This document shows positions 10,774-62,837 of a stretch of 64,000 nt of DNA, one piece after another (the first letter of the stretch is position 1; the number at the start of each line of letters is the position of its first letter). The position numbers and the translations under genes are program-made. Below the pieces are notes generated by a model. That model did not search any database. It worked only from the letters and a program-made list of their open reading frames with translations, and was not told where the DNA came from. The stretch lies in the IMG/VR virus record IMGVR_UViG_3300031787_000001, positions 1-64,000 of that record; one strand, given 5' to 3'.

Positions 10774-10810
10774 CTATAATTTATATTATAAATAGGTTTT
10801 AATTAAAAAA

Positions 10811-12727
10811 TTATTCATCTACCACTAGATAACTATTTTTTGTTGGTGATACAACTGTAGGTTCAATTTTTATTCTTTTTATTATATTACCAAATTTATC
10901 GTAATCAAATACTATATTATTATTTGTTTGTGGTGCATTATTTGATGTTGTTGCGGTTGTTTTTGTGTTTGATGCTTCTTTGTTTTCTTTGTTCATATTT
11001 TGAGCCTTAAGTCCATCCCTAATTATCTTTTGACCTTCTTTTAACTGATTATCTACACTATTACCCATTTTATCAACAAAGTCTGTAACCAATTTACCTC
11101 CTGCAACCGATTCGGTTTTAGTTGATTGTGCTAATTTAGCTTGTGCTGTTGGTCCAAATCCTAATGTTTCCGCAAGTTGAGTTCCTTTTTTACCCGCCTG
11201 ATTCATACCCAATAACGCAATGTAATTGACATCTCTTTTTATGTTTTCAATATTTGAAGCCTGTCCCCTCGCAATGTCTTCTGTTGTTTTTTCTTTTAAT
11301 TGGTCTTGGTATTGTAATAATTCTTTTGCTTGTTGGTCTGTTAACTCATCTAATGCAACTTCTTGTTTACCAAAATATTTTTGTAAATCTGGTGATTTTC
11401 CTAAATCGATGGTCATCTTACCATCTTTCATTCTCGCTATGTTTGTTAAAAATTCCGTTTGGTCAGGATCTAAAGTTAAACCTCTAGCCAATAAATCAGA
11501 AGCCGCCGATGATTTTTCAGCCGCTGCCAAAGCACCTTGTGCGAGTTCTTTGTATGAAATACCCATTTGAGCGGCCATTTCTTTTGCTCTACGTAAATTA
11601 ACACCAGTTATTTCAAATCTACCTTGTTCAGAATTATATGTTGCCAAACCTTTTGCAGCACCAATTAATGCGTCCTGTAGTCCCTCAACATTGTTTGTTG
11701 ACATGTACATTAATTTAAGTGGATCATTAAAATCACCTATTGCACCACCTAATACTTGTAAATTAGCGGATAATTCTAACGCACCTTCAGGATTCATAAC
11801 TTTATCCGCTATTTGGAAAACTTCATTCATACTCATTCTAAATTCAGTTGCCTTTCTTGCCATAGTTGCCAATCCATCAATACCGTTTTTAAAACCATAC
11901 GAATTTATTTTGTCCATATTTTGTGCTAAGTCACCAATTACTTTTTTAGATTGTAAACCGAGTTCCATAGAACGTTTACCCGCTCTTTCTATTGCTGAAT
12001 TTGCTTCTTGTGCACCTATACCTATTTTTTCAAAATCATCATATAAGCTAACCATGTCTTGCATTGAACCTAAATATGCCTTACCAACCTCTCCCGCCTT
12101 TTCTAATGTTTGTTGATTGACCAATGCAAATCTACCACTTTCATTTACAATTGAAATTGCAGCATCTGCCACCTCCGCAAAACTAATACCAAGTTGAACT
12201 AATCTTGGGTTGGCGTCTGTTATTGTTTCTCTAAAATCTCTAGAAAGATCACCTGTTAAAAGTGCTTTGGAGTTAACTTCTTCTAATAATTTTGTCTGTC
12301 GTGCATAATAACTTTCCATTCCCTTGGCCACCATTTCGACAAGTGTTTTACCCATACCTTGTAAAGTAAAAGTTCCTGTCTTAATTTTTTCCATTAGATC
12401 ATCTATACCCACCAATTGATCTTGTAAATTAGGTAAATAAGTATTTGATTGTGATTCTTGAGTTTTTAATAAACCCATAACAGCGTTCAAAGATGCTGTA
12501 CCAACATCCTTAATTGCACTACCGGTACTAACAGTACCTGTACCACTTGTGCTAGATGAACTTGATCCAGAGTTAGATTGTTTTTGTACCTTATTCCATT
12601 CATCCATTAATCTTCTTTTTTCATCGGAAGTTAATGGATTACCACCATTTTGTCTTAAAGCTTCATTAAATACGTCAGTATAATCATTTGAAAATCTTGC
12701 TAACGCTGAATAATTTAAATTTGGCAT
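10811..12727 (-). CDS. Tape measure protein
   Basis: 638 aa, Ala/Gly/Leu-rich and helical in composition; canonical position after tube and chaperone and before the baseplate genes. Confidence 0.75.
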   Translation of the reverse strand: MPNLNYSALARFSNDYTDVFNEALRQNGGNPLTSDEKRRLMDEWNKVQKQSNSGSSSSSTSGTGTVSTGSAIKDVGTASLNAVMGLLKTQESQSNTYLPNLQDQLVGIDDLMEKIKTGTFTLQGMGKTLVEMVAKGMESYYARQTKLLEEVNSKALLTGDLSRDFRETITDANPRLVQLGISFAEVADAAISIVNESGRFALVNQQTLEKAGEVGKAYLGSMQDMVSLYDDFEKIGIGAQEANSAIERAGKRSMELGLQSKKVIGDLAQNMDKINSYGFKNGIDGLATMARKATEFRMSMNEVFQIADKVMNPEGALELSANLQVLGGAIGDFNDPLKLMYMSTNNVEGLQDALIGAAKGLATYNSEQGRFEITGVNLRRAKEMAAQMGISYKELAQGALAAAEKSSAASDLLARGLTLDPDQTEFLTNIARMKDGKMTIDLGKSPDLQKYFGKQEVALDELTDQQAKELLQYQDQLKEKTTEDIARGQASNIENIKRDVNYIALLGMNQAGKKGTQLAETLGFGPTAQAKLAQSTKTESVAGGKLVTDFVDKMGNSVDNQLKEGQKIIRDGLKAQNMNKENKEASNTKTTATTSNNAPQTNNNIVFDYDKFGNIIKRIKIEPTVVSPTKNSYLVVDE

Positions 12728-12731
12728 TATT

Positions 12732-12881
12732 TTAACCTTTTTCTAATTCTATTATATAATTTATGAAATATCTTCTTATATAAATAGGCATGGACAAAAT
12801 ATCCGAATAGGTAAAACCTTTTTTAACCAAAAATAATATCTCTGAAAGTTGATCCTTTCTATATTCCGTAGAAAGGGCGAA
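12732..12881 (-). CDS. Start-less C-terminal extension of the tail assembly chaperone (G-T-like product reached by +1/-2 frameshift)
   Basis: The frame shifted +1 from 12859..13608 reads (F)ALSTEYRKDQLSEILFLVKKGFTYSDILSMPIYIRRYFINYIIELEKG* to TAA at 12732-12734. It has no start codon before residue 30 and an upstream in-frame TAG; it overlaps TTT TTT CGC at 12877-12885. Confidence 0.7.
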   Translation of the reverse strand, partial: FALSTEYRKDQLSEILFLVKKGFTYSDILSMPIYIRRYFINYIIELEKG

Positions 12882-13608
12882 AAAAGTCCACCCCGAAACC
12901 TATAACAAATAGGACTTCTTCTCCTGATGGGGCGATTGTTTTTTGTGTTAAATCTAAACCTGGTTTGTTATCGTTTATAAATTTTCTAAAGTCCTGAGCA
13001 TCTTTAATTGGTAATCTATCAATAAAATTTTTAATATTCATCATATCTTTATTACCTGCAACAGATTTAATCATAAATTCAAGCCTTTTTGTCATAATCG
13101 GTGGTACACCTAAACCATTCCAACTTTTTTGAATTTCGTCTATTTCACTTTCTTGTTTTTTTGTTAAAAATTTAAAAGTAACATCTACCTTAGATTTTTC
13201 CATAAAATATTTGTATTCACCATTTGAATCTGGTGTTAAAGTGAAATCTTTCATTTTTAATGTACCTAAGTCAACGGTTACATTAAAATCTTTATTTGTT
13301 TTCGGATCAGTTAATGTTACTTTATATTCTGAACCAAAAGCAGTGTTTCTAAGAAAAATTAAAATCGCTTGAATATCTTCATCAATTAATTCGTCAATAG
13401 TTATGTCTCTGTCTAAAACTTTTCTTTTTAATAATTCATTAACAACACCATTCGTATTAACAATATTAGGTGCGGCTAATATATTTTCATCTGTTGCTGT
13501 TAGATATGCGACTCTTACTGATTTTTTATTGTTTGGGTAGTGTATTCCTCTTGATGGTAATTCTACCACATCGTATGCGATTGTTGGGTCTATTCTTAAT
13601 TCTTCCAT
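12859..13608 (-). CDS. Tail assembly chaperone / T4 gp26-like baseplate hub assembly protein
   Basis: VELPSRG...MT(A)xDE(N)IL-type N-terminus and a C-terminal GVDFFRP motif; lies between the tube and tape measure genes. Confidence 0.7.
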   Translation of the reverse strand: MEELRIDPTIAYDVVELPSRGIHYPNNKKSVRVAYLTATDENILAAPNIVNTNGVVNELLKRKVLDRDITIDELIDEDIQAILIFLRNTAFGSEYKVTLTDPKTNKDFNVTVDLGTLKMKDFTLTPDSNGEYKYFMEKSKVDVTFKFLTKKQESEIDEIQKSWNGLGVPPIMTKRLEFMIKSVAGNKDMMNIKNFIDRLPIKDAQDFRKFINDNKPGLDLTQKTIAPSGEEVLFVIGFGVDFFRPFYGI

Positions 13609-13659
13609 AATAAGTTAATTTAATAAATAACTATGTTAAAGTAAAGTTTTTAAAATAAA

Positions 13660-13710: not shown

Positions 13711-14199
13711 TTAATAAACAAGAATACAACGATCTGGTCTTAATCCACAATCAATTGATGCAATTTCATCTTGTTTGTAATCAAGTGAACCAAAATTTAA
13801 ACTTGTTATAAATGTACCTTGAAGAATCCATTTTTCAACAACAACACCTGTTGGGTCCAACATTTCTAATTCAATATCTTTTTTATAACCAGCAGCATAA
13901 CCCATACGACCTGTAACTGATTCTGCATGTAAACGGAACCACTCCATTAACGCCTGTGCGGCAGAAGGACCAATTGGGTCTTTAAATGTTACTTTCATCT
14001 CATCCCATGTAAATCTACCAGCAACATATGTTGAGGTATTTAAAAAAGGAATCTCAGTTGCATTTATTTTTGCTGATGGTCTCTGTGTTGATATTACATA
14101 CCATTCGTTAATTCCCAAAGACGAAGGGAAACGAAGGATAAACCTGTTCTGTCTTTTCGGTTCGTAAGGAACCGGCATTTTCATTAGTAAATCTGCCAT
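13711..14199 (-). CDS. gp19: Tail tube protein (T4 gp19-like)
   Basis: EPKRQNRF...QRPS...YVAGRFTWDEMKVTFKDP...EWF...GYKKDIELEMLDPTGVVVEKWILQG; directly downstream of the sheath gene. Confidence 0.9.
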   Translation of the reverse strand: MADLLMKMPVPYEPKRQNRFILRFPSSLGINEWYVISTQRPSAKINATEIPFLNTSTYVAGRFTWDEMKVTFKDPIGPSAAQALMEWFRLHAESVTGRMGYAAGYKKDIELEMLDPTGVVVEKWILQGTFITSLNFGSLDYKQDEIASIDCGLRPDRCILVY

Positions 14200-14229
14200 T
14201 GTAGATTATTTTGTTTTTTTTATCTTTAT

Positions 14230-14237
14230 TATAAATA
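14230..14237 (-). promoter_or_regulatory. Putative late promoter TATTTATA (tail tube); further copies at 14325-14332 and 14354-14361
   Basis: Same motif recurs upstream of about 19 structural genes in the window. Confidence 0.6.
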
Positions 14238-14429
14238 TGTCGTAAATCAAAAAATATTTTTAGATATTATTGATTTTATCAAATATTTTTCGTAGTTTTT
14301 TACTACTAGTATATCTGGTCCCAGTATAAATATTACAATAAATAAAATAAGTTTATAAATAATATAAAACTAGAATACTGGATCTAGTATACTGGGTGAA
14401 ATATAAAAATATAATCTTTATAAAATAAA

Positions 14430-14445
14430 TGTTTCTCGTGAAACA
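14430..14445. promoter_or_regulatory. parS-like palindrome TGTTTCTCGTGAAACA
   Basis: 15/16 match to the bacterial parS consensus TGTTTCACGTGAAACA; intergenic; the palindrome extends into the AAA/TTT flanks. Confidence 0.6.
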
Positions 14446-14459
14446 TTTTTTAGAATAAA

Positions 14460-14484
14460 AAAGGTGGTCAACTAGACCACCTTT
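14460..14484 (-). terminator. Intrinsic terminator after the tail sheath gene
   Basis: AAAGGTGGTC-AACTA-GACCACCTTT perfect stem, followed by a T-run on the minus strand. Confidence 0.8.
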
Positions 14485-14503
14485 ATTTTTATCTCCTTTT
14501 AGA

Positions 14504-17335
14504 TTATATATTATCAAATGAAGCACCTGTTGGTGTTATAATGAACTCTAAATCAATAAATTCAAGAGAACGAGTAGGTTTAATATAGATTTTACCTCTC
14601 AATGTGTTAGCGTCAATATCTTCAGGGGCATTTGATACCGTAACACGGAAATCATAAAGACCTCTTTCTTTCTTGATTGCTTCCATTATTGGATTAACCA
14701 ATCTTAAGAATTCATTTCTTACCTGATCATCATTTTGTTCAAACAATAATCTAACGGCTACCGCAGATATTAATTTTCTTGCTCTTAATAATAATCTTCT
14801 TACGTTAATTCTATCAAGTGCAGATTCTCTAACTTGTAAGGTTTTATTACCCCAAATTATTGTACCTGTATCTGAGAAAGTCGCAATTGGGTTTATTCTA
14901 CCTTTGTAAAGAATGTCTCTTTCGTCCAATGTTAATTTCTTAACAGCTTTAATTGATTTAACTAAACCTCTTGAATAACCCGCAACCGCGAACCATGGAT
15001 AAGAAACATTATCAGTTAATGCTACATTTCTTAATACCTCACCTGTTGGTGGTATGTAAAGTTGTGTTGCATTATCACCATCTCTTACCTGTATCCAAGG
15101 CCAGTATGTAGCTGAATAGTTACTATCATAACCTAAATCATCTAACATACCAACAACTTCTTCGGCATCATCTACATTTGGTGAATTTATAATATATAAT
15201 GAATCGGCTCTTTCTTCTTCAACCATATCAATTGCTTGATTAGTTAATGAATTGTGATCATAAAAGTTTAGACCAGGCGTTGCGAATACATTTATATTTA
15301 CCGCCTCAGGATTTGAGAATGTTTCAATACCTTTTAGAAAAGCATAATAATCTGAGTTACCTTCAGTAGAACTGAAAACACCACCATTACTTTCCCAGTT
15401 TGACACATATGTATTTTTTCCAAATATGTATTGATCGGTGTTTGTTTTTACATTTCTGTAAATGTCCCAACCATCAAATCCACCATAAGCCGCGAATGTG
15501 AACTTACGGAAAGTTATATTTTCTAACTTATCTTTATTTAAACCTTCTAAATCATATGGGGTTGTTTTATATGTTATACCCGTAATTGACGCGGCGTTAA
15601 CAGATAAGTGGAATGCATATGTTGTTGTATCTTCTGAACTTAAACCTTTATATTTTAAAAGATCGTTATCATACTTGAACCCTTCTTGAGTTGAAAAACC
15701 TAAAGATACTTTTCTTGGTTTATCTCCATTTGTTGTGATTGGAGATCCGTCGGATTCATAACCAACGATATCACCCGCATCGAAGTATTCTGTTTTATAC
15801 ATTAAACTACCCAATATTGAATTTGTTCCGAAACTTGTGTTACTTGAAAAACCTTTGAAACCTGCGGGAATTGCATCTGCCGGTGCGTTTTCTTTCATCT
15901 CCAACATAATGAATTTTGATTTTAATTCATATTCACCATCACTCGTACCTAATTTTTTAGCAATATATCCCGGAACTTCAGGGTCCATAGAACATCTTGA
16001 ATATTTTTCAAGAGCCACTACATTTTCATCGGTATCATTAAAATCACGAACAAGTAAATCAAATTCTTTTGTATCTAAATTAATGTTAGCAATTGTAATT
16101 TTTACTTGTTGATTAGACGCTTCACCATCAGATATTGTGATAACATCAAAAAGATCTGCAACTTTACCACCACGAACTTCAGATACTACTGTTGGTGACA
16201 ATGCAGTACTCCATCTTTCCGCGAAATCGAGTTGGTCTAAATTATAAACATTACTAGTACTTAAACCTCTAATTAAACCTTGTTTATATAAATTTTTAAC
16301 TAAATTAGGATAAGACTCGTGAAGATATAAAGGGAATTCAACATAAGATTTATCAAATACAGAATTACCAATTACTTTACCAATATATTTTGAAGATGTT
16401 AAATCCATACTACATTGATATGATTTAAGACCACCGGTTAATCCATTAACACTTAATTTGAATTCACTTAAAGGATCAGAATCTAATGTAGAAGATGTGA
16501 TATTAACATTTGAAGAATTTGTCACTTCTAATGTTAAAGATTGACCAACATATCTACCTCTAGATCTTAATGCCGCAACAATAACATTCGAATAATCCGT
16601 ATTTAAAGAAGCAGGATACTTGAATCTAGTTACGGTAAATGTATTTCCTGTATCGGGATAAACAAATAAATAAGAATAAACACCATCAATTGTTGTATCT
16701 ACACCTGGAGTTGATTCAGTATAATAAACATTATACCAATTTTTACCATTGTTTGTACCTATTGGTGATGATATTGTTGTACCAGTTAAACCAGATACTG
16801 ATGAATTAGGAACAGGTCCAACTGTAAACCAGTTACCACCATTAAATGTTGTTCCACTTATATACTCAGGTATTGTAGTACCATCTGTTGTTAACTTATC
16901 TGATAGTTCAGTATAAAACGCACTTAATGTAACTGCTGTTGTTGACATTCCACCATTTGTGGTTGTAGGAGTTGCGGTTGTATCTACAGTAACACCACCT
17001 AATGTTCTAATACCAAAAGTGTTAAAAGGTCTGTAACCTGTTAAACCTAAAACTCTTGTTACAAATAATTGATTAGATTCTTCTAAATATGATTTTGCAA
17101 CATATCCTAATTCATATTTTGGATTACCATTACCATCTTTTTCAGGTGATGTTGTTCCGAAATATGTTCTAAACTCATCAAAACTTGTAATTAATACTGG
17201 TTCGAAAGCAGGTCCTTTTAATGTCTCCCCAACCAAACCCAATGTAGTTACACCAACACTTTGTGCAACAAATGTTAAATCTAATTCAGATGTGTACACA
17301 CCTGGTGACACGAATACTCTGTTTGAAGTTGCCAT
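14504..17335 (-). CDS. gp18: Contractile tail sheath protein (T4 gp18-like, 943 aa)
   Basis: FVSPGVYTSELD N-terminus; PWFAVAGYSRG, LYKGRINPI, IWGNKTLQ...SALDRINVRRLLL, IYIKPTRSLEFI C-terminal motifs. Confidence 0.93.
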   Translation of the reverse strand: MATSNRVFVSPGVYTSELDLTFVAQSVGVTTLGLVGETLKGPAFEPVLITSFDEFRTYFGTTSPEKDGNGNPKYELGYVAKSYLEESNQLFVTRVLGLTGYRPFNTFGIRTLGGVTVDTTATPTTTNGGMSTTAVTLSAFYTELSDKLTTDGTTIPEYISGTTFNGGNWFTVGPVPNSSVSGLTGTTISSPIGTNNGKNWYNVYYTESTPGVDTTIDGVYSYLFVYPDTGNTFTVTRFKYPASLNTDYSNVIVAALRSRGRYVGQSLTLEVTNSSNVNITSSTLDSDPLSEFKLSVNGLTGGLKSYQCSMDLTSSKYIGKVIGNSVFDKSYVEFPLYLHESYPNLVKNLYKQGLIRGLSTSNVYNLDQLDFAERWSTALSPTVVSEVRGGKVADLFDVITISDGEASNQQVKITIANINLDTKEFDLLVRDFNDTDENVVALEKYSRCSMDPEVPGYIAKKLGTSDGEYELKSKFIMLEMKENAPADAIPAGFKGFSSNTSFGTNSILGSLMYKTEYFDAGDIVGYESDGSPITTNGDKPRKVSLGFSTQEGFKYDNDLLKYKGLSSEDTTTYAFHLSVNAASITGITYKTTPYDLEGLNKDKLENITFRKFTFAAYGGFDGWDIYRNVKTNTDQYIFGKNTYVSNWESNGGVFSSTEGNSDYYAFLKGIETFSNPEAVNINVFATPGLNFYDHNSLTNQAIDMVEEERADSLYIINSPNVDDAEEVVGMLDDLGYDSNYSATYWPWIQVRDGDNATQLYIPPTGEVLRNVALTDNVSYPWFAVAGYSRGLVKSIKAVKKLTLDERDILYKGRINPIATFSDTGTIIWGNKTLQVRESALDRINVRRLLLRARKLISAVAVRLLFEQNDDQVRNEFLRLVNPIMEAIKKERGLYDFRVTVSNAPEDIDANTLRGKIYIKPTRSLEFIDLEFIITPTGASFDNI

Positions 17336-17375: not shown

Positions 17376-17383
17376 TATAAATA
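17376..17383 (-). promoter_or_regulatory. Putative late promoter (AAAGA)TATTTATA of the sheath gene
   Basis: Recurrent motif, 40 nt upstream of the ATG. Confidence 0.6.
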
Positions 17384-19376: not shown

Positions 19377-19389
19377 ACCTAATAAATAG

Positions 19390-22252: not shown

Positions 22253-22284
22253 GAAATATAAGATATTTATAGTAAATAAACAAA
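22253..22284 (-). promoter_or_regulatory. Bacteroidota-type promoter TTTG-N20-TATATTTC
   Basis: One mismatch to TAnnTTTG with correct spacing; 6 nt before the ATG at 22246. Confidence 0.55.
22264..22271 (+). promoter_or_regulatory. Putative late promoter TATTTATA (neck gene)
   Basis: Recurrent motif, 15 nt before the ATG at 22287. Confidence 0.6.
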
Positions 22285-26361: not shown

Positions 26362-26393
26362 TAAATATAATAAAAATTTTACCCTAAATCAAA
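26362..26393 (-). promoter_or_regulatory. Bacteroidota-type promoter TTTG-N20-TATATTTA of the DNA polymerase, overlapping a late-type TATTTATT (26360-26367)
   Basis: Spacing and motif match; followed by a roughly 60-nt leader containing two inverted repeats. Confidence 0.55.
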
Positions 26394-26757: not shown

Positions 26758-26779
26758 ATAGGTTTATTTTATAAATATT

Positions 26780-31362: not shown

Positions 31363-31400
31363 GATTTTTTCTTTTTAATATAAATATCTTTTTAAATGAA

Positions 31401-33681: not shown

Positions 33682-33736
33682 TTTTTATTTTATTTATAAA
33701 TATCTTTAATTTACTATTTATTTTTTCATATTAAAT

Positions 33737-35203: not shown

Positions 35204-35249
35204 TACATTTTTTATATAAATATCAATGAAATAAAAGATTTGATAATAA

Positions 35250-35891: not shown

Positions 35892-35939
35892 ATTCTTTTT
35901 TTATATAAATATCATAGATTTATGTTTTTTCAATTTTTT

Positions 35940-40622: not shown

Positions 40623-40652
40623 ATTTTAATAAATATCTTTCGAAACGTTTGA

Positions 40653-40660
40653 TATTTATA
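40653..40660 (+). promoter_or_regulatory. Putative late promoter TATTTATA, back to back with TATTTATT (40628-40635) on the minus strand
   Basis: Divergent pair inside a 50-bp intergenic region. Confidence 0.6.
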
Positions 40661-40672
40661 TAAAAAACTGTA

Positions 40673-46472: not shown

Positions 46473-46511
46473 TATATTTATAATTAAAATAAATAATTTA
46501 AAACTAAAAAA

Positions 46512-49268: not shown

Positions 49269-50056
49269 AAAATATAACAGTAATTTTACCAGTACATAAA
49301 TTAAACGAAGAGTACATTGTAATGTTAACAAATTCAATAAAATCGGTTGAATTATTTTATGAAGATGTTAAATTATTAATTGTACATCCAACTGAAATTT
49401 CAGGTGATTTGAAAAAAATTCTTTCCACATTAAATCAAAAATTAGAGATAAAATGTCTTGAAAATAAAAAGAATAGTGGTTTTACCTCACAAGTAAATTT
49501 AGGTATAGAACAATGTGATACCGAATGGTTTTCAATATTGGAGGTTGATGATGAGTATAAACCTATATGGTTAAAATCAATAATGGAATATAAAAACGAA
49601 TATACCGATGTTGATGTGTTTTTACCAATTATAAAAGATGTAAATGTGGAAGGTAATTTTCTATCTTTTACAAATGAATCTACATGGGCATATGGGTTCT
49701 CAGAAAAACAAGGATTCCTCGATAATGAAGTTTTATTAGAATATCAAAACTACCAAACAAGTGGTGGATTATTTAAAACTGAAGTAATAAAAGAAAATGG
49801 ATTGTTTAAAGAAAATTTTAAATTAACGTTTATTTATGAACTATTACTAAGATTAACACATAATAAAGTAAAAATTATGACTGTACCAAAAATAGGGTAC
49901 CAACATGTTAATTTTAGAGAAGACTCTTTATTTTGGAATTATAAAAATGACGAATCCTCTAAATTATCAGAAAATGAAGTTAAGTTTTGGTTAGATGCCG
50001 CAAAAAAAGAATATTTCTTTAAAAATAATAGAGACCTAAACTATGTTGAGTCTTAA
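49265..50056 (+). CDS. GT-A fold (GT2) glycosyltransferase
   Basis: ITVILPVH, QVNLGIEQCDTEWFSILEVDDEY, FIYELLLRL. Confidence 0.85.
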   Translation: MKNITVILPVHKLNEEYIVMLTNSIKSVELFYEDVKLLIVHPTEISGDLKKILSTLNQKLEIKCLENKKNSGFTSQVNLGIEQCDTEWFSILEVDDEYKPIWLKSIMEYKNEYTDVDVFLPIIKDVNVEGNFLSFTNESTWAYGFSEKQGFLDNEVLLEYQNYQTSGGLFKTEVIKENGLFKENFKLTFIYELLLRLTHNKVKIMTVPKIGYQHVNFREDSLFWNYKNDESSKLSENEVKFWLDAAKKEYFFKNNRDLNYVES

Positions 50057-50754
50057 TGCCAAAAAAAAGAACCCAAAAAATCTATTTTGGGGATGATCAA
50101 GAAAAAGCGGTAATAAGATATTTGGAATCTGAAACCGAAGAAGAAAAGAACAAGATATTCAATGAATATTTAAGAGAACCCCTCATTATAATGGTCGAAA
50201 GTATTATCCGCCGTTATAAATTATATAGAAAAGACTTAGAATTTGAAGAAATTCATAATGACACAATGTCTTTTCTAATGACAAAGATTAATAAATTCGA
50301 TCATACTAAAAATCATAAGGCGTATTCTTACTTTGGTACAATATGTAAGAATTATCTTATGGGGGCAATTCAAAAAGACACTAAAGAATTAAAAAGAAAT
50401 GTGTCATATGAAGATGTAACAAGTGAACTCGAAAATAGACCAGATTTGGTTTACACTATTGATGCATATGAAATAGATTATTCCGAAGTATTGGTTAAGT
50501 TAGTAACTTCTTTAGAAGAGTTTATTGAAAATGAAGAATTAAACGAAAACGAAAAAAAATTAGGTTACGCGTTAATAGAAATATTTACAAATTTTGATAA
50601 AATATTTCAAATAGGAGATGGTAATAAATTTAATAAAAACCTAATATTACTCTCACTTAGAGAAATGACATCCTTGTCCACTAAAGAAATTAGGATTTCT
50701 CTAAAAAAATTCAAGAAAACATATAACGGGATAATGTTAGGATTTTTAAACTAA
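50056..50754 (+). CDS. Phage sigma factor, T4 gp55-like (late)
   Basis: KINKFDHTKNHKAYSYFGTICKNYL aligns with the gp55/sigma region 2 pattern FDPEKxxNPFAYFTQIxxN; YFGDDQEKAV N-terminus. Confidence 0.72.
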   Translation: MPKKRTQKIYFGDDQEKAVIRYLESETEEEKNKIFNEYLREPLIIMVESIIRRYKLYRKDLEFEEIHNDTMSFLMTKINKFDHTKNHKAYSYFGTICKNYLMGAIQKDTKELKRNVSYEDVTSELENRPDLVYTIDAYEIDYSEVLVKLVTSLEEFIENEELNENEKKLGYALIEIFTNFDKIFQIGDGNKFNKNLILLSLREMTSLSTKEIRISLKKFKKTYNGIMLGFLN

Positions 50755-50769
50755 AATCTATTTATTGTT

Positions 50770-54764: not shown

Positions 54765-54786
54765 TTGATATTTATAAAATAAAAAG

Positions 54787-56157: not shown

Positions 56158-56170
56158 AATATTTATAAAT

Positions 56171-56626
56171 ATGAAAAATTTAAATCAAATTATAAGAAAA
56201 CACCTCAGAGTTATATCTGAAAATGATGGAAAACCTGAACAGGAAAATTATATGTTTTTTGGTAACATAGAACAAATGAAAAGACAATGTGAACTATTAA
56301 TGGGGGAAGATAAAAACCAAATAGATTCAATTTTAAAGGAACACGATTGGGCACAAGATCATATTTCTGAGGCAAAAAGTTTACTAGACCAAGTTTTTGA
56401 TTTTTTAATGAATCAAACAAAAGGAGAACAATATGAAGATGAAATGATTAATGAAGAAAGTCAAATTGATGAGGGAAAAAACAAACCAACAAATCCTAAA
56501 TTATGGGCAAGAGCTAAATCTATGGCAAAATCCAAATTTAAGGTTTATCCAAGTGCATATGCAAATGGTTGGGCGGCAAAATGGTATAAAAAACATGGTG
56601 GTGGTTGGAGAAAAACTAAAAAATAA
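56171..56626 (+). CDS. Probable head-internal protein; acidic module plus basic KPTNPKLWARAK...YPSAYANGWAAKWYKKHGGGWR module
   Basis: Start at 56171 lies 3 nt after TATTTATA; ISE, INE and IDE motifs. Confidence 0.65.
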   Translation: MKNLNQIIRKHLRVISENDGKPEQENYMFFGNIEQMKRQCELLMGEDKNQIDSILKEHDWAQDHISEAKSLLDQVFDFLMNQTKGEQYEDEMINEESQIDEGKNKPTNPKLWARAKSMAKSKFKVYPSAYANGWAAKWYKKHGGGWRKTKK

Positions 56627-56638
56627 ATTTTATTACAA

Positions 56639-57934: not shown

Positions 57935-58375
57935 TTAATAAAAGATAATTTTAATATCACATTCATTAAGGAGTTCTAAACTCCTTTTTTGTTGCTCTTC
58001 CCACATCTCTTTATTGTTTGTTGTACAAACCTCTTTACAATAAACTGTTTTTATACCCGAGTTAACAATACCCCTTGCACAATCCATACAAGGTAAACCC
58101 GACGTAAGATATATTGTTGAATTTTTTAATGAAACACCTATTCTTGCTGCGTTATATATGGCATTACGTTCCGCATGTTCAAACCAGAAGTATTTTTCGG
58201 GTCTTTCCTGACGTTCTTCTTTTGAATCATATAAACCCCTTGGGAATGAATTATAACCTGTAGAAAGGATCTCATTATCCTCACCAACTATAACTGCACC
58301 TATTTGGGTGTATTTGTCTTTTGACTTTAACTTAACCTGTTCTGCGATCCCCAAAAAATAGTCTTTCCAATCCAT
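57935..58375 (-). CDS. cd: dCMP deaminase
   Basis: STGYNSFPRG, EHAERNAI, PCMDCA; start MDWKDYF is coupled (TGATG) to the upstream stop. Confidence 0.92.
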   Translation of the reverse strand: MDWKDYFLGIAEQVKLKSKDKYTQIGAVIVGEDNEILSTGYNSFPRGLYDSKEERQERPEKYFWFEHAERNAIYNAARIGVSLKNSTIYLTSGLPCMDCARGIVNSGIKTVYCKEVCTTNNKEMWEEQQKRSLELLNECDIKIIFY

Positions 58376-58701
58376 CACATTAATTTTTGTGGAGACCAAT
58401 ATTGTAATCTATTATCTGAATACCTATCCAATCTACGAGCCTCTTTTTTCTCGATAAGTTTATTAATTTCTGTCATGTGTTTTTTATTTCTAATATCAAC
58501 ACCGACAATGTATCCTCCGTCCGATTTTTCATATGTTGTTTCAAATATGAATTTACCCTCATCATCTTTTTTTAATAGTTCAACAATACCATTTTTGGTA
58601 TCATTTTCTTTCTTATAAATTTTGTAGGGAATCGAACGTAATTCAATTAACTTTTGAAGAACGTCTAATCTTAGTTTTTCGTATTCATTTTCATCTGTCA
58701 T
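58375..58701 (-). CDS. Hypothetical protein with a possible HeH/SAP-like N-terminus
   Basis: YEKLRLDVLQKLIELRSI...TKNGIVELLKKDD. Confidence 0.5.
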   Translation of the reverse strand: MTDENEYEKLRLDVLQKLIELRSIPYKIYKKENDTKNGIVELLKKDDEGKFIFETTYEKSDGGYIVGVDIRNKKHMTEINKLIEKKEARRLDRYSDNRLQYWSPQKLM

Positions 58702-58705
58702 TTAA

Positions 58706-58737
58706 CAAATATAACGAATAAAACAATAAACACCAAA
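58706..58737 (-). promoter_or_regulatory. Perfect Bacteroidota primary-sigma promoter TTTG-N20-TATATTTG
   Basis: Exact TTTG / TAnnTTTG consensus; ends 4 nt before the ATG at 58701. Confidence 0.75.
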
Positions 58738-58738
58738 A

Positions 58739-58888
58739 TTAATTCACTTTAAGTAACCAAAATTTTCTATCATTTATTTTTACAAAGGTGGTATTTGATG
58801 TCATCCTATCAACATAAGTTTCTTTAACTCCATTTGTAAATGTGAGAACAAATCCTGTTTTTGTTGAATTCCATTTAATTTTATTCAT
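58739..58888 (-). CDS. 49-aa hypothetical protein (below the ORF-track cutoff)
   Basis: MNKIKWNSTKTGFVLTFTNGVKETYVDRMTSNTTFVKINDRKFWLLKVN*; fills the gap and has its own TTTA-N19-TATATTAA candidate at 58903-58933. Confidence 0.5.
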   Translation of the reverse strand: MNKIKWNSTKTGFVLTFTNGVKETYVDRMTSNTTFVKINDRKFWLLKVN

Positions 58889-58934
58889 ATAATGTATTTG
58901 AATTAATATAAGATTTTAACGGGATTATGTAAAC

Positions 58935-58963
58935 AAAAAACCCCCGATTTCTCGAGGGTTTTT
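58935..58963 (-). terminator. Intrinsic terminator after the major capsid gene
   Basis: Minus strand: AAAAACCCTCGA-GAAA-TCGGGGGTTTTTT. Confidence 0.85.
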
Positions 58964-58982
58964 ATATTGACATCAATTAAGA

Positions 58983-60722
58983 TTATCTTAATGTATCCAA
59001 GCTAAATGTAGTTAAACCATTTACTGTGATAGTACCGAAGTAACGGTTGTTAACCATTTTCTTCGCGTATCTTGTCATGATACCTTTGATAGGTGTCATT
59101 GTGAATGGATTATACATTGTTGGAGTCAACTGTAAAGGTACGTATGGAGCGTAGATGTAACCAGCGTCCAATAAAGATTTACCTTTATGACCAATCAAGA
59201 TCTTATTCGCAGGGAAGTAAGGATCACGATAAACTTGGTAACGACCAGCAAGTGAACCTACTTTTTCGATACCCATGTTATATTGATCTTGCTCAGGAGC
59301 TGCGTTTGATACGTGGAAATACTCTAAATCATCGAATACTGCAGAAACTTCTGAAGAAACAACGATCCAGTTAGCACCACCTCTCAAAGTAGTCTTGTGG
59401 ATTTGAGCAGAAATTTGGTTGATCTTGGTAACCAAAGTTTGGTTCCAGTCTTTCTGAGTGTAACCTTGAAGAGTTGCACCACCTGTTCCACCATATTTCC
59501 ATTCGTTATAGTCCCATTTAGCCGTCCAAGCTGCACCTTTTCTAAGGTCACGTAAGATTTCACGATCAACCTCAGCTGCGATTTGCTCAGATAACAATGC
59601 TGTTAACTCAGCTTCAGCGTCGATGTTGTGGAATGCACTTACGTCTTGAGCCAATTCAGGAGACCAAGTAGCTCTCAACTTTCTTTCAGTAACAGAAACT
59701 GTTACAGATTGAAGATCGAAAGAAACTTCACCAATTTCATCTTCGAATTCTAATGTTTCATACACTCTGAAGTGTAAAACGAAGTCAGCAAGAGCGAATG
59801 TACTATTAAGTGTTGTGTTAGAGTAACCGGACACAGAAGAATAGTTTTGTAAATCTACTTGAACATAAATTGTTCCTGTTTCATCACAAATGTCATTATA
59901 CTTAGCAGTACCACCCATAGCACCTGGGAAAGTAGCTGTTGATTTTTGACCGTATTCAACAATACCTTTACCGTATTTTTGAGTTACGATATTGAAGTTT
60001 TTAGAAACACCACTGAATTTAATTTCAGCAGATGCTAAAAATTCTTCAGTATCCATAATCTGACCGTTAGGTCCAATTAATTTACCTTGACCGTCTTTAG
60101 CGAATCCGGTGAACGTAAGAATTAATGAAGGAACGCTTTGACTATTTAATGAACTTAATGGACTTACAGGTGTAGCCACACCGTTACTGAAATTAACTAC
60201 ACTAGCAGCATTCATTGTGATAGCACTGAATCTACCTTTAGAATAATCGAAAAGTCCTGTGTCAGGTGCGTTACCGTCACCAGTCTCATAGAAACGATCA
60301 TAAAGGTTTACTCCAGTATATCCATCATCAGCAGAACCTGTTCCACCAGGAATACCATATGGTGTGTAGTGTGATCCACTGTTTCTTTCCTGAATTTTAG
60401 GAATGAAGTAGAATAATTTACCGATAGGTAAGTTCATAGCTTGTACAGACACGATGTCATTAGCTAATAATTTAGAGAATACACGTCTGATGATTGGGAA
60501 TACAACAGTTTCGAAAGAACCTGATGCATCCGCAACCGCAGCTTCGTTGATTAAGTATGAAGCTTGGTTTTCATACAATTGTGCAATGTTATCTTTTTGG
60601 TGACCATCAAGACCTTCTAAAAAGCCTAAGTCATCCCATTTTTTAATGGTATCTTCTTTGATAACACGAAGGTGCTTAAGACCGATGTTACCAACCATAC
60701 CTGATTCTAATAATGCTCCCAT
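58983..60722 (-). CDS. gp23: Major capsid protein (T4 gp23-like, 579 aa)
   Basis: PIIRRVF...IVSVQAMNLPIGKLFY; RKLRATWSPELAQDVSAFHNIDAEAELTALLSEQIAAEVDREIL; GYIYAPYVPL...PIKGIMTRY. Confidence 0.97.
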   Translation of the reverse strand: MGALLESGMVGNIGLKHLRVIKEDTIKKWDDLGFLEGLDGHQKDNIAQLYENQASYLINEAAVADASGSFETVVFPIIRRVFSKLLANDIVSVQAMNLPIGKLFYFIPKIQERNSGSHYTPYGIPGGTGSADDGYTGVNLYDRFYETGDGNAPDTGLFDYSKGRFSAITMNAASVVNFSNGVATPVSPLSSLNSQSVPSLILTFTGFAKDGQGKLIGPNGQIMDTEEFLASAEIKFSGVSKNFNIVTQKYGKGIVEYGQKSTATFPGAMGGTAKYNDICDETGTIYVQVDLQNYSSVSGYSNTTLNSTFALADFVLHFRVYETLEFEDEIGEVSFDLQSVTVSVTERKLRATWSPELAQDVSAFHNIDAEAELTALLSEQIAAEVDREILRDLRKGAAWTAKWDYNEWKYGGTGGATLQGYTQKDWNQTLVTKINQISAQIHKTTLRGGANWIVVSSEVSAVFDDLEYFHVSNAAPEQDQYNMGIEKVGSLAGRYQVYRDPYFPANKILIGHKGKSLLDAGYIYAPYVPLQLTPTMYNPFTMTPIKGIMTRYAKKMVNNRYFGTITVNGLTTFSLDTLR

Positions 60723-60750
60723 TTTAGTTTGTTTTTATTTTTTTGGTTTA

Positions 60751-62037
60751 TTATTTTATTTTACTCATCAAATCTTTCATTCTCTTGAACTGTGGATTTT
60801 CGTATGCTTTTGATTCCGACAATACATTTGAAGAAGATGTTGATGGAGTTGAAGTGATTTTTTCTGAAACTGTTTCGGTTACTGGTTTTTTAGTTCCCAA
60901 TTCAGATTTTATTGTGTTAAATAAGTTTTTAGACTCATTCATAGTAGAAATCGAATCAAATCTCTTCATAATATTCAATTTCTCCTGTTTTGTTGTTGAA
61001 TGTTCAGTGAACAAACGAGTAGCGTAAGCCAAATTAGCATTGAATACCGCAACTTCATTTAATTTTTCCTTAAAAAGAACTAAAGCCTTTTTGTATTCTG
61101 CGTTTTGTTTTCTTAATTTAGAAACTTCTTCATTAATACCAAAAACACCTGAACCTGCTTTATATTTTTTCTTACTTGGTAATCCGGATCTGTCTAAACC
61201 ACCTTTATTACCATGAGGATTTGATTTAGTTCTTGCGGCTTCAGTCGCCTCAATTGGTGTCCCATCTTCAGAACCTTCTGGTTCTTCGTATGTGAATGGT
61301 TCCTCTTCAGAAATATCTAATGTTGGATCTTCTTCATCAAGTGTTATTTCATAAACATTTTCTTCACCTAATTCAGGATCCATGTCCATTTCTTCTTCCA
61401 ATTCAGGTTCCATACCCATTTCTTCTTCCAATTCAGGTTCCATACCCATTTCTTCTTCCAATTCAGGATCCATGTCCATTTCTTCAGAAAGATCTTCTGT
61501 GTATGGTGATTCTTCTTCTAGATCTTCGTCACCTTCACCATCTAATTTAATGATATATTCATCACCGTCGATTTCAAGATCAAGTTCATCATCATCTTTT
61601 TTAACAATAATACCATCTTCAGGTTTCATTGCTTTAAAAACTTTAAGAACTTCATCGTGAGAAGCGCCTGTCATGTCCATAACACCACTATCGTCAGATG
61701 GTTCGTCTTCATATGATGTTTCGTCTTCATCATCAGAAGGTAATTCTTCATCATCAGAAGTCTCATCATCAGAAGGTAACTCTTCATCATCAGAAGTTTC
61801 ATCTTCATCGGAGGTTGTGTCATCACCAGCATCATCGGCTGTTACATCATCTTCCTCTTCTTCAGGATTGGGTTGTTCTTCAACATCCTTTTCCTCTTCT
61901 TCCAAACTTTCTTTAAGCAATTCGTTTAGTTCTTGTTTCATTGTTGAAGCAAGTATACCTTTTGCATTTGCTTTTACTGCTTCTTCAAGATTTTGTACTT
62001 GAAGTAACGCTTGTTCTAAAACTGATTTTTCGGTCAT
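60751..62037 (-). CDS. Prohead scaffold/core protein (gp22-like)
   Basis: Highly acidic middle and coiled-coil C-terminus; lies between the protease and capsid genes; late motif at 62056-62063. Confidence 0.8.
   Translation of the reverse strand: MTEKSVLEQALLQVQNLEEAVKANAKGILASTMKQELNELLKESLEEEEKDVEEQPNPEEEEDDVTADDAGDDTTSDEDETSDDEELPSDDETSDDEELPSDDEDETSYEDEPSDDSGVMDMTGASHDEVLKVFKAMKPEDGIIVKKDDDELDLEIDGDEYIIKLDGEGDEDLEEESPYTEDLSEEMDMDPELEEEMGMEPELEEEMGMEPELEEEMDMDPELGEENVYEITLDEEDPTLDISEEEPFTYEEPEGSEDGTPIEATEAARTKSNPHGNKGGLDRSGLPSKKKYKAGSGVFGINEEVSKLRKQNAEYKKALVLFKEKLNEVAVFNANLAYATRLFTEHSTTKQEKLNIMKRFDSISTMNESKNLFNTIKSELGTKKPVTETVSEKITSTPSTSSSNVLSESKAYENPQFKRMKDLMSKIK
61370..61495 (-). repeat. 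Four 30-bp repeats (EEM[D/G]M[D/E]PEL[E/G])
   Basis: Units start at 61370, 61400, 61430 and 61460. Confidence 0.85.
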
Positions 62038-62117
62038 TTGCGAATTTTATTTTTATATAAATACTTTGATTATATAGAAAATTTACTTTTAAGATATTAA
62101 TATCAATAAAAAATTTA

Positions 62118-62801
62118 CTATTTTGATAAAAATGTATCTAGTCTACCCATTAATTTTTTCATTCTATCATCAACAACAGGTTTTCTCTCAATTGTTTCTT
62201 GATATTGTTCTCTGTCTTTTAAATCACTAAACACATATGCTCCGGGAGTCGATGGTGAGGAGACTAAGTCAAAACACACTAATTCAAAATCATCTTGTAC
62301 TATGTTTTGTCCTTTTATATTTTTCAATGATCCTACACCTCTTGATGAAATACCTAAAGTGGCACCATTCATAATTAACATTGCCGCTTGATCACCTCTT
62401 GTACTTACGATACCCATTTTTTTCCAACCTGGTGATGTAAATAATTTAATTTTACCCATTAACATTTTACCATCCCACCATGTTTCAATGATTGAATGTG
62501 ATACTCTATCTAAATCAATTAATGAAGATGAGGGGTGATTTAATTCATTTAAAGCACCACCTTTTTTTATTAAAGATTGATATTTTTCATTTTCTCTTTT
62601 TAATAAAACTTCAGGATAAATTCTACCATTTTTGTTTGGGGTATCGTATTTCTGTAAAACAGCAAAAAGGATAAGGTCTTGCGAAAAGTCCATATCCTTC
62701 ATTTCTGAAATTATTTTTTTATTATCTTCTGGTGAGATATGGCCGGCATCATATTCTATTAATATACCATGTCCGGTTTCTTTTGGTCCTAATATCTTCA
62801 T
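62118..62801 (-). CDS. gp21: Prohead protease (T4 gp21-like)
   Basis: NKNGRIYP, NELNHP, GISSRGVGS, FDLVSSPSTPGA; late motif at 62817-62824. Confidence 0.93.
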   Translation of the reverse strand: MKILGPKETGHGILIEYDAGHISPEDNKKIISEMKDMDFSQDLILFAVLQKYDTPNKNGRIYPEVLLKRENEKYQSLIKKGGALNELNHPSSSLIDLDRVSHSIIETWWDGKMLMGKIKLFTSPGWKKMGIVSTRGDQAAMLIMNGATLGISSRGVGSLKNIKGQNIVQDDFELVCFDLVSSPSTPGAYVFSDLKDREQYQETIERKPVVDDRMKKLMGRLDTFLSK

Positions 62802-62837
62802 TTATAGTTTTTATACTATAAATACATCGATATCGTA

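What the first reader, a model, noticed from the sequence alone, without database searches (positions are those of the whole stretch)
10787..62824. Late promoter candidate TATTTAT(A/T) is the reverse complement of the T4 late promoter
Seen on the coding strand upstream of about 19 mostly structural genes, usually 3-18 nt from the start codon. Motif positions: 10787, 13622, 14230, 17376, 19381, 22264, 26770, 31379, 33695, 35215, 35904, 40628, 40653, 46475, 50759, 54769, 56160, 62056, 62817. It is often preceded by GA. Established: T4 gp55 recognises TATAAATA on the non-template strand. Inference: the gp55-like sigma at 50056..50754 has a different -10 specificity whose consensus happens to be the inverted T4 box.
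Basis: partly seen in the sequence, partly recalled or inferred. Interest (0 to 1): 0.65.

Follow-up and report, generated by a model that had tools for sequence, protein, structure and literature searches.

The report
Late promoter box of a Bacteroidota jumbo phage
A short DNA word, TATTTAT(A), sits just in front of the virion genes of this 287-kb phage and its relatives and is most likely the late promoter read by a phage-made sigma factor; it is a two-letter variant of the phage T4 late box, not an inverted one.

Summary
All 19 sites exist on the strand of the gene downstream. The word is not over-represented in the window as a whole (46 vs 44.8 expected). It is strongly over-represented in sense orientation in co-directional intergenic DNA of the whole 286,785-bp genome: TATTTATA 43 vs 4.4±2.1, while the T4 box TATAAATA is at chance (7 vs 5.1).

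- **Gene class:** it precedes sheath, tube, baseplate and prohead-protease genes. It is absent before DNA polymerase and helicase and from an early block at 141-186 kb.
- **Early block:** this carries Bacteroidota-type TTTG-N19-TATATTTG promoters.
- **Conservation:** TATTTAT is at least 90% conserved at three of four aligned sites in IMG/VR relatives. It recurs in Flavobacterium phage immuto and phage Mel-JY01.
- **Architecture:** no -35 element.
- **RNA:** metatranscriptome contigs from four studies stop at the box upstream of the capsid operon.

The "inverted T4 box" reading is a coincidence. TAT..ATA is palindromic, so the word matches the T4 box at 6 of 8 positions in the same orientation. 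The core shared across the sigma family is TATTTA; RM378 uses TATTTAA.

The sigma at 50056-50754 has a sigma-2 fold but is only weakly gp55-like. A second, canonical sigma lies at 239 kb. Spacing suggests many late mRNAs are leaderless. No transcription start has been mapped.

The parts
10787..10794 (-). late box TATTTATA, 14 nt before the ATG of gene 5920-10773 (1617 aa, unknown)
13622..13629 (-). late box, 14 nt before the baseplate-hub-like gene 12859-13608
14230..14237 (-). late box, 31 nt before the tail tube gene 13711-14199. Three more sense copies lie at 14325, 14337 and 14354 in the same 300-nt spacer.
17376..17383 (-). late box, 41 nt before the tail sheath gene 14504-17335
19381..19388 (-). 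late box, 5 nt before the ATG of gene 18864-19376 (short-spacing class)
22264..22271 (+). late box, 16 nt before gene 22287-23405 (weak head-tail adaptor match)
26770..26777 (-). late box, 13 nt before gene 26389-26757
31379..31386 (-). late box, 17 nt before gene 28834-31362. A terminator hairpin at 31423-31401 lies just upstream.
33695..33702 (-). late box, 14 nt before gene 32500-33681
35215..35222 (-). late box, 12 nt before gene 33737-35203. A terminator hairpin at 35278-35250 lies just upstream.
35904..35911 (-). late box, 13 nt before gene 35301-35891
40628..40635 (-). late box, 6 nt before the ATG of gene 37170-40622 (short-spacing class). It forms a back-to-back pair with 40653 in a divergent spacer.
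40653..40660 (+). late box, 13-16 nt before gene 40673-41422
46475..46482 (+). late box, 30 nt before the PhoH-like gene 46512-47234. This is the least conserved of the four sites aligned across relatives.
50056..50754 (+). Divergent sigma factor, 232 aa. It has a sigma-2 fold plus a family-specific C-terminal helical domain, and no late box of its own. It is the candidate reader of the box.
50759..50766 (+). late box, 4 nt before the ATG of gene 50770-51147, immediately after the sigma gene. Box and spacing (4-5 nt) are conserved in 42 of 44 distinct relatives.
54769..54776 (+). late box, 11 nt before gene 54787-56157. It is conserved in all 47 distinct relatives, with spacing of 10-15 nt.
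56160..56167 (+). late box, 4 nt before the ATG at 56171. The gene is 56171-56626; the TTG at 56135 is not the start.
62056..62063 (-). late box, 19 nt before gene 60751-62037, which heads the operon with the major capsid gene 58983-60722. RNA-library contigs cover 58986-62062 and nothing in the next 180 nt upstream.
62817..62824 (-). late box, 16 nt before the prohead protease gene 62118-62801

Best explanation
(a/g)A-TATTTAT-A is the -10-like core of this phage's late promoters.

**Proposed mechanism**
- Host (Bacteroidota) core RNA polymerase is redirected late in infection by the phage sigma encoded at 50056-50754.
- That sigma's sigma-2 domain recognises the box on the non-template strand. 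No -35 element is used.
- Transcription starts a few nucleotides downstream, in the direction in which the box reads TATTTATA.
- The box ends either 4-6 nt or 11-17 nt before the ATG. About 40% of late transcripts would therefore begin at or next to the start codon (leaderless). The rest would carry 5-12-nt A-rich leaders, which fits a host that does not use Shine-Dalgarno pairing.
- Early genes instead use the host primary sigma at TTTG-N19-TATATTTG promoters.

**Relation to T4**
- The box is the T4 late box with TT for AA at its 4th and 5th positions.
- In T4 numbering these are -10 and -9. The adenines at -12 and -8 that T4 gp55 flips into deep pockets are kept.

**Shown here:** existence, orientation, enrichment, conservation, gene-class association, absence of a -35 box, sigma-2 fold, and co-occurrence of sigma family and motif.

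**Inferred:** that it is a promoter, which sigma reads it, the start-site position, and leaderless translation.
For: - **Orientation and enrichment:** sense TATTTATA 43 vs 4.4+-2.1; reverse complement 7 vs 5.1.
- **Architecture:** no conserved position from -45 to -1 and no enriched upstream word; A-rich downstream, as at T4 late promoters (PMC2988020).
- **Gene class:**
  - Present before sheath, tube, baseplate, protease and the capsid operon; absent before DNA polymerase and helicase.
  - In the early block at 141-186 kb, 1 of 94 genes has the box, against 63 of 269 elsewhere; Fisher p = 2e-8.
  - That block carries about 35 Bacteroidota-type -33/-7 promoters. The same ribosomes translate genes without the box, so it is not a general translation signal.
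- **Conservation:**
  - 80 related loci: 176 sense vs 16 antisense.
  - TATTTAT is at least 90% conserved at three of four aligned sites while flanks vary; the fourth (46475) is weaker.
- **Spacing:**
  - Bimodal: 4-6 nt (29 sites) and 11-17 nt (36 sites), with a trough at 7-10 nt.
  - In relatives the short class stays at 4-5 nt, while a long-class site drifts over 10-15 nt.
  - This is expected if the box fixes the mRNA 5' end.
- **Terminators** lie directly upstream at 31423 and 35278. A back-to-back pair sits in a divergent spacer at 40628/40653.
- **RNA:** contigs of four freshwater metatranscriptomes from four studies cover 58986-62062. Depth is zero in the next bin in three runs and 0.08 in the fourth, and zero past the capsid stop.
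- **Reader:**
  - Sigma-2 fold: rmsd 2.3-3.0 A over 82-96 residues, Z 8.4-9.1.
  - Y92 aligns with gp55 Y97, which stacks on the flipped A at -12 (PMC7892883). It is at least 90% conserved in the family.
  - One full-length family member is present in immuto, Mel-JY01 and RM378. Each shows the TATTTA core enriched in sense.
  - The canonical second sigma gave no match in immuto and Mel-JY01.
Against: - No transcription start site has been mapped. Assembled contigs cannot define 5' ends or strand, and only one locus could be laid.
- The box alone is not specific: about 47 of 110 genomic TATTTATA copies lie inside genes.
- Assignment to the sigma at 50056-50754 is correlative. A second phage sigma with regions 2 and 4 exists in this genome.
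- The late box shares ATATTT.T with the host-type -7 box, and an EM run merged the two. A modified host sigma is therefore not excluded.
- The sigma's C-terminal domain may be a sigma-4 relative (Z 4.5-6.1 to six sigma-4 structures). If so, the lack of a -35 box needs explaining.
- Spacings of 4 nt would put the start only 5 nt after the last T of the 7-mer, the short end of what bacterial RNA polymerase normally does.
Confidence: 0.6

Rival explanations
1. The box is a late or middle promoter, but it is read by the second phage sigma (271 aa, regions 2 and 4, genome 239342-240157) and not by the one at 50056-50754.
For: This protein is an unambiguous sigma-70 family member: region 2 at 62 bits and region 4 at 47.7 bits. 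Its gene does not carry the late box.
Against: - A sigma with region 4 is expected to use a -35 element, and none is conserved.
- Phages immuto and Mel-JY01 show the same box enrichment but gave no match to this protein or to Pfam Sigma70_r2.
- Both of those phages do carry the other sigma family.
Confidence: 0.1
2. The box is a variant of the host primary-sigma -7 element (TAnnTTTG). Host holoenzyme uses it with help from a phage activator or sigma-appropriation factor, as at T4 middle promoters. The phage sigma would then have another role.
For: Late aTATTTATa and early gTATATTTGt share ATATTT.T, and an EM motif search merged them. Both are T-rich -10-like words.
Against: - The invariant positions differ. 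The host-invariant TA and G are variable or A in late sites, and the late-invariant T1/A2 fall on the host's 'nn'.
- No -33 TTTG occurs at about 19 bp.
- The two classes are segregated along the genome.
- RM378, from a different host phylum with 42% GC, keeps the TATTTA core together with the sigma family.
Confidence: 0.12
3. The word is not a promoter. It is an RNA-level signal near the start codon: a translation enhancer or repressor site, or an endonuclease processing site that creates the mature 5' ends.
For: It lies 4-19 nt from start codons in most cases, where ribosome-binding and RegA-type operator sites lie. RNA coverage edges could equally result from processing.
Against: - Spacing is bimodal and reaches 30-41 nt at the sheath, tube and PhoH genes. 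That is unlike a ribosome-positioning element.
- The box is absent from 93 of 94 early genes translated by the same ribosomes.
- It follows intrinsic terminators, where no upstream RNA would exist to be processed.
- It occurs as divergent pairs (40628/40653).
Confidence: 0.08
4. The sigma binds the T4 box TATAAATA on the template strand, or the promoter is truly inverted. This is the literal reading of 'reverse complement of the T4 box'.
For: The 8-mer is the exact reverse complement of the T4 box. Template-strand promoter recognition has a precedent in phage AR9 non-virion polymerase (title of PMC5449584, seen).
Against: - The two words already agree at 6 of 8 positions in the same orientation.
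- Lineages with the same sigma family use TATTTAA (RM378, L086). Its reverse complement is not the T4 box.
- The sigma-2 fold and the conserved aromatic aligned to gp55 Y97 point to ordinary non-template-strand recognition.
Confidence: 0.03

Closest known systems
Phage T4 late promoters (TATAAATA at -13 to -6; gp55 + gp33 + gp45)
   Same: - A single compact 8-bp A/T box at the -10 position, with no -35 element and an A/T-rich stretch downstream.
- Placed before virion genes on either strand, in a phage with a gp23-type capsid that encodes its own small sigma.
- 6 of 8 positions are identical in the same orientation, including the adenines at -12 and -8 that gp55 flips into deep pockets (PMC2988020, PMC7892883).
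   Different: - TT replaces AA at -10/-9.
- The T4 box itself is not enriched here (7 vs 5.1).
- The sigma is 232 aa with an extra C-terminal domain and is only marginally similar to gp55.
- No gp45 or gp44 homologue was found by sequence.
- The boxes sit much closer to start codons.
Bacteroidota primary-sigma promoters (-33 TTTG / -7 TAnnTTTG)
   Same: A T-rich -10-like word sharing ATATTT. The same genome uses textbook examples for its early genes.
   Different: Late boxes lack the -33 element, the terminal G and the correctly placed TA. They occupy a different part of the genome.
Sigma factors of 'group 2' jumbo phages (Iyer et al. 2021, PMC7824862)
   Same: A gp23-type capsid, no phage RNA polymerase, and two sigma types in one genome: a reduced one and an RpoD-like one. 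Bacteroidota phages are included in that group.
   Different: That survey assigns no promoter specificity. Here a motif is tied to the reduced type.
Promoters of leaderless mRNAs in Actinobacteria and Deinococcus (from general knowledge)
   Same: A -10 element at a nearly fixed short distance from the ATG. A gap in the spacing distribution separates this class from genes with leaders.
   Different: Here the pattern occurs in a phage of Bacteroidota and depends on a phage sigma. Leaderless starts are inferred from spacing only.

Membership tests
T4-type late promoter system | single -10-like 8-bp box without a -35 element, A/T-rich downstream | tested here: met
   Position matrix of 67 sites, plus an upstream word search.
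T4-type late promoter system | consensus TATAAATA on the non-template strand | tested here: not met
   Sense TATAAATA is 7 vs 5.1 expected; TATTTATA is 43 vs 4.4.
T4-type late promoter system | precedes late (virion) genes and not early or replication genes | tested here: met
   (1/94 vs 63/269, p = 2e-8). Many downstream genes are unannotated.
T4-type late promoter system | gp55 orthologue as specificity factor | tested here: inconclusive
   phmmer gives gp55 at E 0.0088. The family profile gives gp55 at E 0.064 and SigA at E 0.003. hhalign gives 56% probability at E 1e-4 over 112 columns. There is an extra C-terminal domain.
T4-type late promoter system | gp45 sliding clamp, gp44/62 clamp loader and a clamp-binding C-terminal tail on the sigma | tested here: inconclusive
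   No match to PF09116, PF02916, T4 gp45 or T4 gp44. The record is estimated 86% complete and these proteins diverge fast. C-terminal tails of the sigma family are not conserved; some end in acidic-hydrophobic motifs.
T4-type late promoter system | gp33 co-activator | not tested
   No T4 gp33 reference was fetched. Iyer et al. report gp33 orthologues in group 2 jumbo phages (PMC7824862).
T4-type late promoter system | transcription starts about 6 nt downstream of the box, late in infection | not testable with these tools
   Only assembled metatranscriptome contigs were available. Their edge is consistent with this but not decisive.
Bacteroidota sigma-A promoter | -7 TAnnTTTG with -33 TTTG about 19 bp upstream | tested here: not met
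   Late sites lack both. About 35 early sites in the same genome meet it, which serves as a positive control.
Sigma-70 family (protein 50056-50754) | sigma-2 domain fold | tested here: met
   AF2 pLDDT 92.6. VIA-align to RpoS, SigA, SigW and SigK region 2: rmsd 2.3-3.0 A over 82-96 residues, Z 8.4-9.1. Pfam Sigma70_r2 scores 21.7 bits, below the 24-bit cut-off.
Sigma-70 family (protein 50056-50754) | sigma-4 DNA-binding domain | tested here: inconclusive
   The C-domain folded alone has pLDDT 89.7. Foldseek finds nothing. The wide VIA search lists six sigma-4 domains at Z 4.5-6.1, within the noise range for helical bundles.
Leaderless-mRNA promoters | -10 element at a fixed 5-8 nt from the ATG | tested here: met
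   TATTTA-to-ATG spacing in this genome: 5 nt (14 sites), 6 nt (10), 7 nt (14), with a trough at 8-10 nt. In RM378 there is a sharp peak at 7 nt (11 sites).
Leaderless-mRNA promoters | mRNA 5' end at the start codon | not testable with these tools
   Needs raw-read or 5'-end data.

The most novel reading that the evidence does not exclude
The sigma at 50056-50754 represents a large, uncharacterised lineage of phage sigma factors: 1,257 clusters at 50% identity.
- It is found in T4-superfamily myoviruses including a cultured Flavobacterium phage, Rhodothermus phage RM378 and abundant freshwater jumbo phages.
- It is not a gp55 orthologue.
- On its own, and without clamp coupling, it directs host polymerase to a -35-less TATTTA(T/A) element.
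- That element is positioned so that a large share of late mRNAs are leaderless.

This would be a promoter class and an expression strategy not described for phages of this phylum.
Probability: 0.3. Interest if true: 0.6.

Novelty: new variant of a known kind. Interest (0 to 1): 0.5.

Why it matters
- **Annotation:** if confirmed, it gives a rule for late genes in a very abundant, mostly uncultured group of freshwater jumbo phages and their cultured relatives. Most of their genes have no annotation; a box in front of a gene marks it as late, probably virion or lysis.
- **Sigma specificity:** it offers a natural experiment. The box is the T4 late box with two central bases changed, alongside changes at the residue aligned to the gp55 -9 pocket.
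- **Translation:** it suggests that phages of hosts lacking Shine-Dalgarno pairing may rely on leaderless or very short-leader late mRNAs.
- **Tractability:** phage immuto and its Flavobacterium host are in culture, so these ideas can be tested directly.

Tried and rejected
- **Whole-window over-representation:** rejected (46 vs 44.8). Only strand- and position-aware counts show the signal.
- **E. coli-type TTGACA/TATAAT promoters:** not enriched (90 vs 86.1).
- **A -35-like partner:** none at fixed spacing. With variable spacing only generic A/T words such as TTAATA appear, explained by intergenic composition.
- **PHROGs on the sigma and its neighbours:** no family.
- **T4 gp45, gp44 and Pfam clamp models against the genome:** nothing found. 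This is not evidence of absence.
- **Whole-model Foldseek:** only weak hits, all to sigma factors (E 0.019 or worse).
- **C-domain Foldseek:** no match.
- **A conserved clamp-binding tail on the sigma:** not found.
- **Literature searches:** searches for the word with 'late promoter' or 'phage', and for immuto, Mel-JY01 and RM378 promoters, found no prior description. The library lacks many subscription journals.
- **A third, 'middle' promoter class for the second sigma:** only a vague TTTTTTGT-TATATT-like pattern seen by eye. Not pursued.
- **Complex prediction:** not used, because the host polymerase is unknown.

Full report
**What the window is**

The window is the first 64 kb of a single 286,785-bp virus record with 30.5% G+C.

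Annotated genes in the window:

| Gene | Coordinates |
|---|---|
| gp23-type major capsid protein | 58983-60722 (-) |
| prohead protease | 62118-62801 (-) |
| tail sheath | 14504-17335 (-) |
| tail tube | 13711-14199 (-) |
| baseplate hub | 12859-13608 (-) |
| DNA polymerase | 23402-26299 (-) |
| helicase | 19426-21177 (+) |
| PhoH | 46512-47234 (+) |

- The best capsid matches are Rhodothermus phage RM378 and Microcystis phage Mel-JY01.
- This is a distant member of the T4 superfamily. It fits the 'group 2' jumbo phages of Iyer et al.: gp23 capsid, no phage RNA polymerase, phage sigma factors (PMC7824862).
- No Shine-Dalgarno sequences are visible; leaders are A-rich.

**Check of the observation**

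- All 19 positions carry TATTTAT(A/T) on the strand of the gene that follows.
- The word is not more frequent in the window than dinucleotide shuffles give: 46 vs 44.8.
- Counted by strand in the 175 co-directional intergenic regions of the whole genome:

| Word (sense strand) | Observed | Shuffles |
|---|---|---|
| TATTTATA | 43 | 4.4±2.1 |
| GATATTTAT | 14 | 0.4 |
| TATAAATA (T4 box) | 7 | 5.1 |

- It is the most strand-asymmetric 7- and 8-mer upstream of genes.

**What distinguishes the genes that carry it**

- Structural genes carry the box; DNA polymerase and helicase do not.
- A block at about 141-186 kb, made of many small genes, has the box before 1 of 94 genes. Elsewhere it is 63 of 269 (p = 2e-8).
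- That block carries about 35 copies of aaTAAATTTGG-N~19-gTATATTTG. This is the -33/-7 promoter type of Bacteroidota primary sigma factors, known from general literature.
- The phage therefore has a host-type early class and a distinct second class in front of virion genes.
- The early genes act as an internal control. They are translated by the same ribosomes without the box, so the box is not a general translation signal.

**Anatomy**

- Aligning 67 sites shows information only in (a/g)A-TATTTAT-A and in an A-rich stretch downstream. Nothing is conserved between -45 and -1, and no upstream word is enriched with variable spacing.
- E. coli-type bipartite promoters are at chance.
- Intrinsic terminators lie directly upstream of the boxes at 31379 and 35215.
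- The divergent spacer at 40622-40673 holds a back-to-back pair.
- This is the architecture of T4 late promoters: one 8-bp box at -13 to -6, no -35 element, A/T-rich downstream (PMC2988020).

**Conservation**

- The sigma-like protein has more than 7,900 90%-identity clusters within reach of a word search and 1,257 clusters at 50% identity.
- In 80 IMG/VR loci with 76-100% sigma identity, co-directional spacers hold 176 sense vs 16 antisense TATTTATA.
- At three of four orthologous spacers TATTTAT is at least 90% conserved while the flanks vary. The fourth, before PhoH at 46475, is weaker.
- Contigs with sigma at 35-38% identity keep TATTTAT immediately downstream of the sigma gene. One at 44% has ATATTTAA instead.
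- Other genomes with a full-length member of the sigma family:

| Genome | Sense-strand result |
|---|---|
| Flavobacterium phage vB_FspM_immuto (160 kb, cultured) | TATTTATA 22 vs 2.5±1.7; T4 box 6 vs 3.5 |
| Phage Mel-JY01 | TATTTATA 14; T4 box 2 |
| RM378 (42% G+C) | tTATTTAA 18 vs 4; TATTTATA 0 |

- The core shared across the family is TATTTA.

**The 'inversion'**

- TATTTATA is the reverse complement of TATAAATA only because TAT..ATA is its own reverse complement.
- Read in the same direction, the two words differ just at positions 4 and 5 (TT vs AA).
- In the T4 open complex, gp55 flips A-12, A-9 and A-8 into pockets. Y97 stacks on A-12; N13 and H95 line the shallow -9 pocket; T99 bonds A-8 (PMC7892883).
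- In the same register the present box keeps A-12 and A-8 and changes -10 and -9.
- In the weak alignment to gp55, F86 and Y97 are matched by F81 and Y92. H95 is replaced by Y90 and T99 by G94. Y92 is at least 90% conserved in the family.
- This fits a changed -9 pocket, but it rests on a marginal alignment and is inference.
- The TATTTAA form in RM378 and one metagenomic lineage shows that the exact reverse-complement relation is accidental.

**Spacing**

- From the end of TATTTAT to the ATG of an ORF of at least 60 codons:

| Spacing | Sites |
|---|---|
| 4 nt | 11 |
| 5 nt | 7 |
| 6 nt | 11 |
| 7-10 nt | 5 in all |
| 11-17 nt | 36 |

- Measured from the hexamer TATTTA, the short class is 5-7 nt in this genome. 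RM378 has a sharp peak at 7 nt with 11 sites.
- In relatives the short-class sites stay at 4-5 nt, while a long-class site varies over 10-15 nt.
- If TATTTA occupies the usual -10 hexamer position, the A of the ATG falls 6-8 nt downstream. That is where bacterial polymerases normally start (general knowledge).
- The simplest reading is that the box fixes the 5' end of the mRNA. About 40% of late mRNAs would then be leaderless and the rest would carry very short leaders.
- The avoided 7-10-nt spacings correspond to leaders of a few nucleotides, which are poor for both initiation modes. This is inferred, not shown.

**RNA evidence**

- Twenty freshwater metatranscriptome runs from nine studies hold part of 57900-63300.
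- Contigs of four runs from four studies were laid on this 5,401-base stretch.
- They cover 58986-62062, which is the capsid gene plus the gene upstream of it. Some contigs bridge the two genes.
- Depth in the next bin, 62063-62243, is zero in three runs and 0.08 in the fourth. It is zero past the capsid stop.
- The box is at 62056-62063. The longest contigs end at 62032 and 62020.
- Even coverage would be expected from contaminating DNA, so this looks like a highly expressed unit bounded by the box.
- Contigs cannot prove a start site or a strand, and only one read-laying run was allowed.

**Who reads the box**

The sigma at 50056-50754:
- Pfam Sigma70_r2 scores 21.7 bits, below the cut-off.
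- T4 gp55 is the best single-sequence PDB hit, at E 0.0088.
- The family profile prefers SigA region 2 (E 0.003) to gp55 (E 0.064).
- hhalign to gp55 gives 56% probability over residues 8-119.
- The AlphaFold model is confident (pLDDT 92.6).
- Its N-domain superposes on sigma-2 domains at 2.3-3.0 Å.
- The C-domain (137-232) finds nothing by Foldseek. A wide search finds six sigma-4 domains at Z 4.5-6.1, which is within noise for helical bundles.
- No gp45 or gp44 homologue was detected. The C-terminal tails of the family are not conserved.

So it is a sigma-70-family protein with a sound sigma-2 domain. 'gp55-like' describes its role better than its ancestry.

The second sigma:
- A canonical sigma with regions 2 and 4 lies at genome 239342-240157.
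- It gave no match in immuto and Mel-JY01, which still have the box.
- The box has no -35 partner.
- I therefore favour the small sigma as reader. This remains correlative.

**Rivals**

- An EM search merged the late box with the host-type -7 box, since both contain ATATTT.T. A modified host sigma cannot be excluded.
- Against that: the invariant positions differ, the -33 box is missing, the two classes are separated along the genome, and RM378 keeps the core in a different host phylum.
- An RNA-level signal (translation or processing) is made unlikely by the bimodal and sometimes long spacing, by absence from early genes, and by the position after terminators.
- Template-strand reading of a true T4 box is made unlikely by the TATTTAA lineages.

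**Novelty**

- In-silico late consensus sequences reported for T4 relatives are TATAAATA-like (PMC2988020).
- I found no paper linking TATTTATA or TATTTAA to phage late transcription, nor any promoter analysis of immuto, Mel-JY01 or RM378. The library is incomplete.
- The finding is a new variant of a known kind: a phage-sigma-dependent, -35-less late promoter with a changed box, in phages of Bacteroidota. It carries a likely leaderless component.

**Procedural notes**

Noticed in passing
genome G000:C1 about 141000-172000 (outside the window): About 35 near-identical early promoters of Bacteroidota type (aaTAAATTTGG, about 19 nt, gTATATTTG) precede small genes, mostly on the + strand. This points to a Bacteroidota host.
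   Followed up: partly
genome G000:C1:239342-240157 (-): A second phage sigma factor, 271 aa, with Pfam regions 2 and 4. A ClpP protease gene lies about 0.7 kb upstream of it on the same strand. Its promoter class is unknown.
   Followed up: partly
genome G000:C1:81744-88990: A cluster of 23 tRNA genes found by ARAGORN.
   Followed up: no
PP395634.1 (loci L098-L107): 'Microcystis phage' Mel-JY01 shows the same late box. It also shows the Bacteroidota-type TATATTTG word enriched in sense (8 vs 1). That is unexpected for a cyanobacterial host and may bear on its host assignment.
   Followed up: no
window 14200-14503 (-): The 300-nt spacer between the sheath and tube genes holds a terminator, four sense copies of the box (14354, 14337, 14325, 14230) and a pair of imperfect repeats around CCAGTATACTAG-like words.
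   Followed up: no
genome G000:C1 upstream of genes 138068-139117 and 139166-140608 (-): Two adjacent genes have almost identical 30-nt upstream regions ending in the box 6 nt from the ATG. This suggests a tandem duplication that included the promoter.
   Followed up: no
window 49265-50754 and loci L084, L086: The order glycosyltransferase, sigma, small gene, then a gene of about 600 aa is conserved down to 38% sigma identity. In L084 a large terminase gene follows within 4 kb.
   Followed up: no
NC_004735.1 (loci L109-L115): RM378 has dozens of tTATTTAA boxes. Eleven lie exactly 7 nt (counted from TATTTA) before an ATG, a very regular arrangement suggesting leaderless late mRNAs in a thermophile's phage.
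   Followed up: partly
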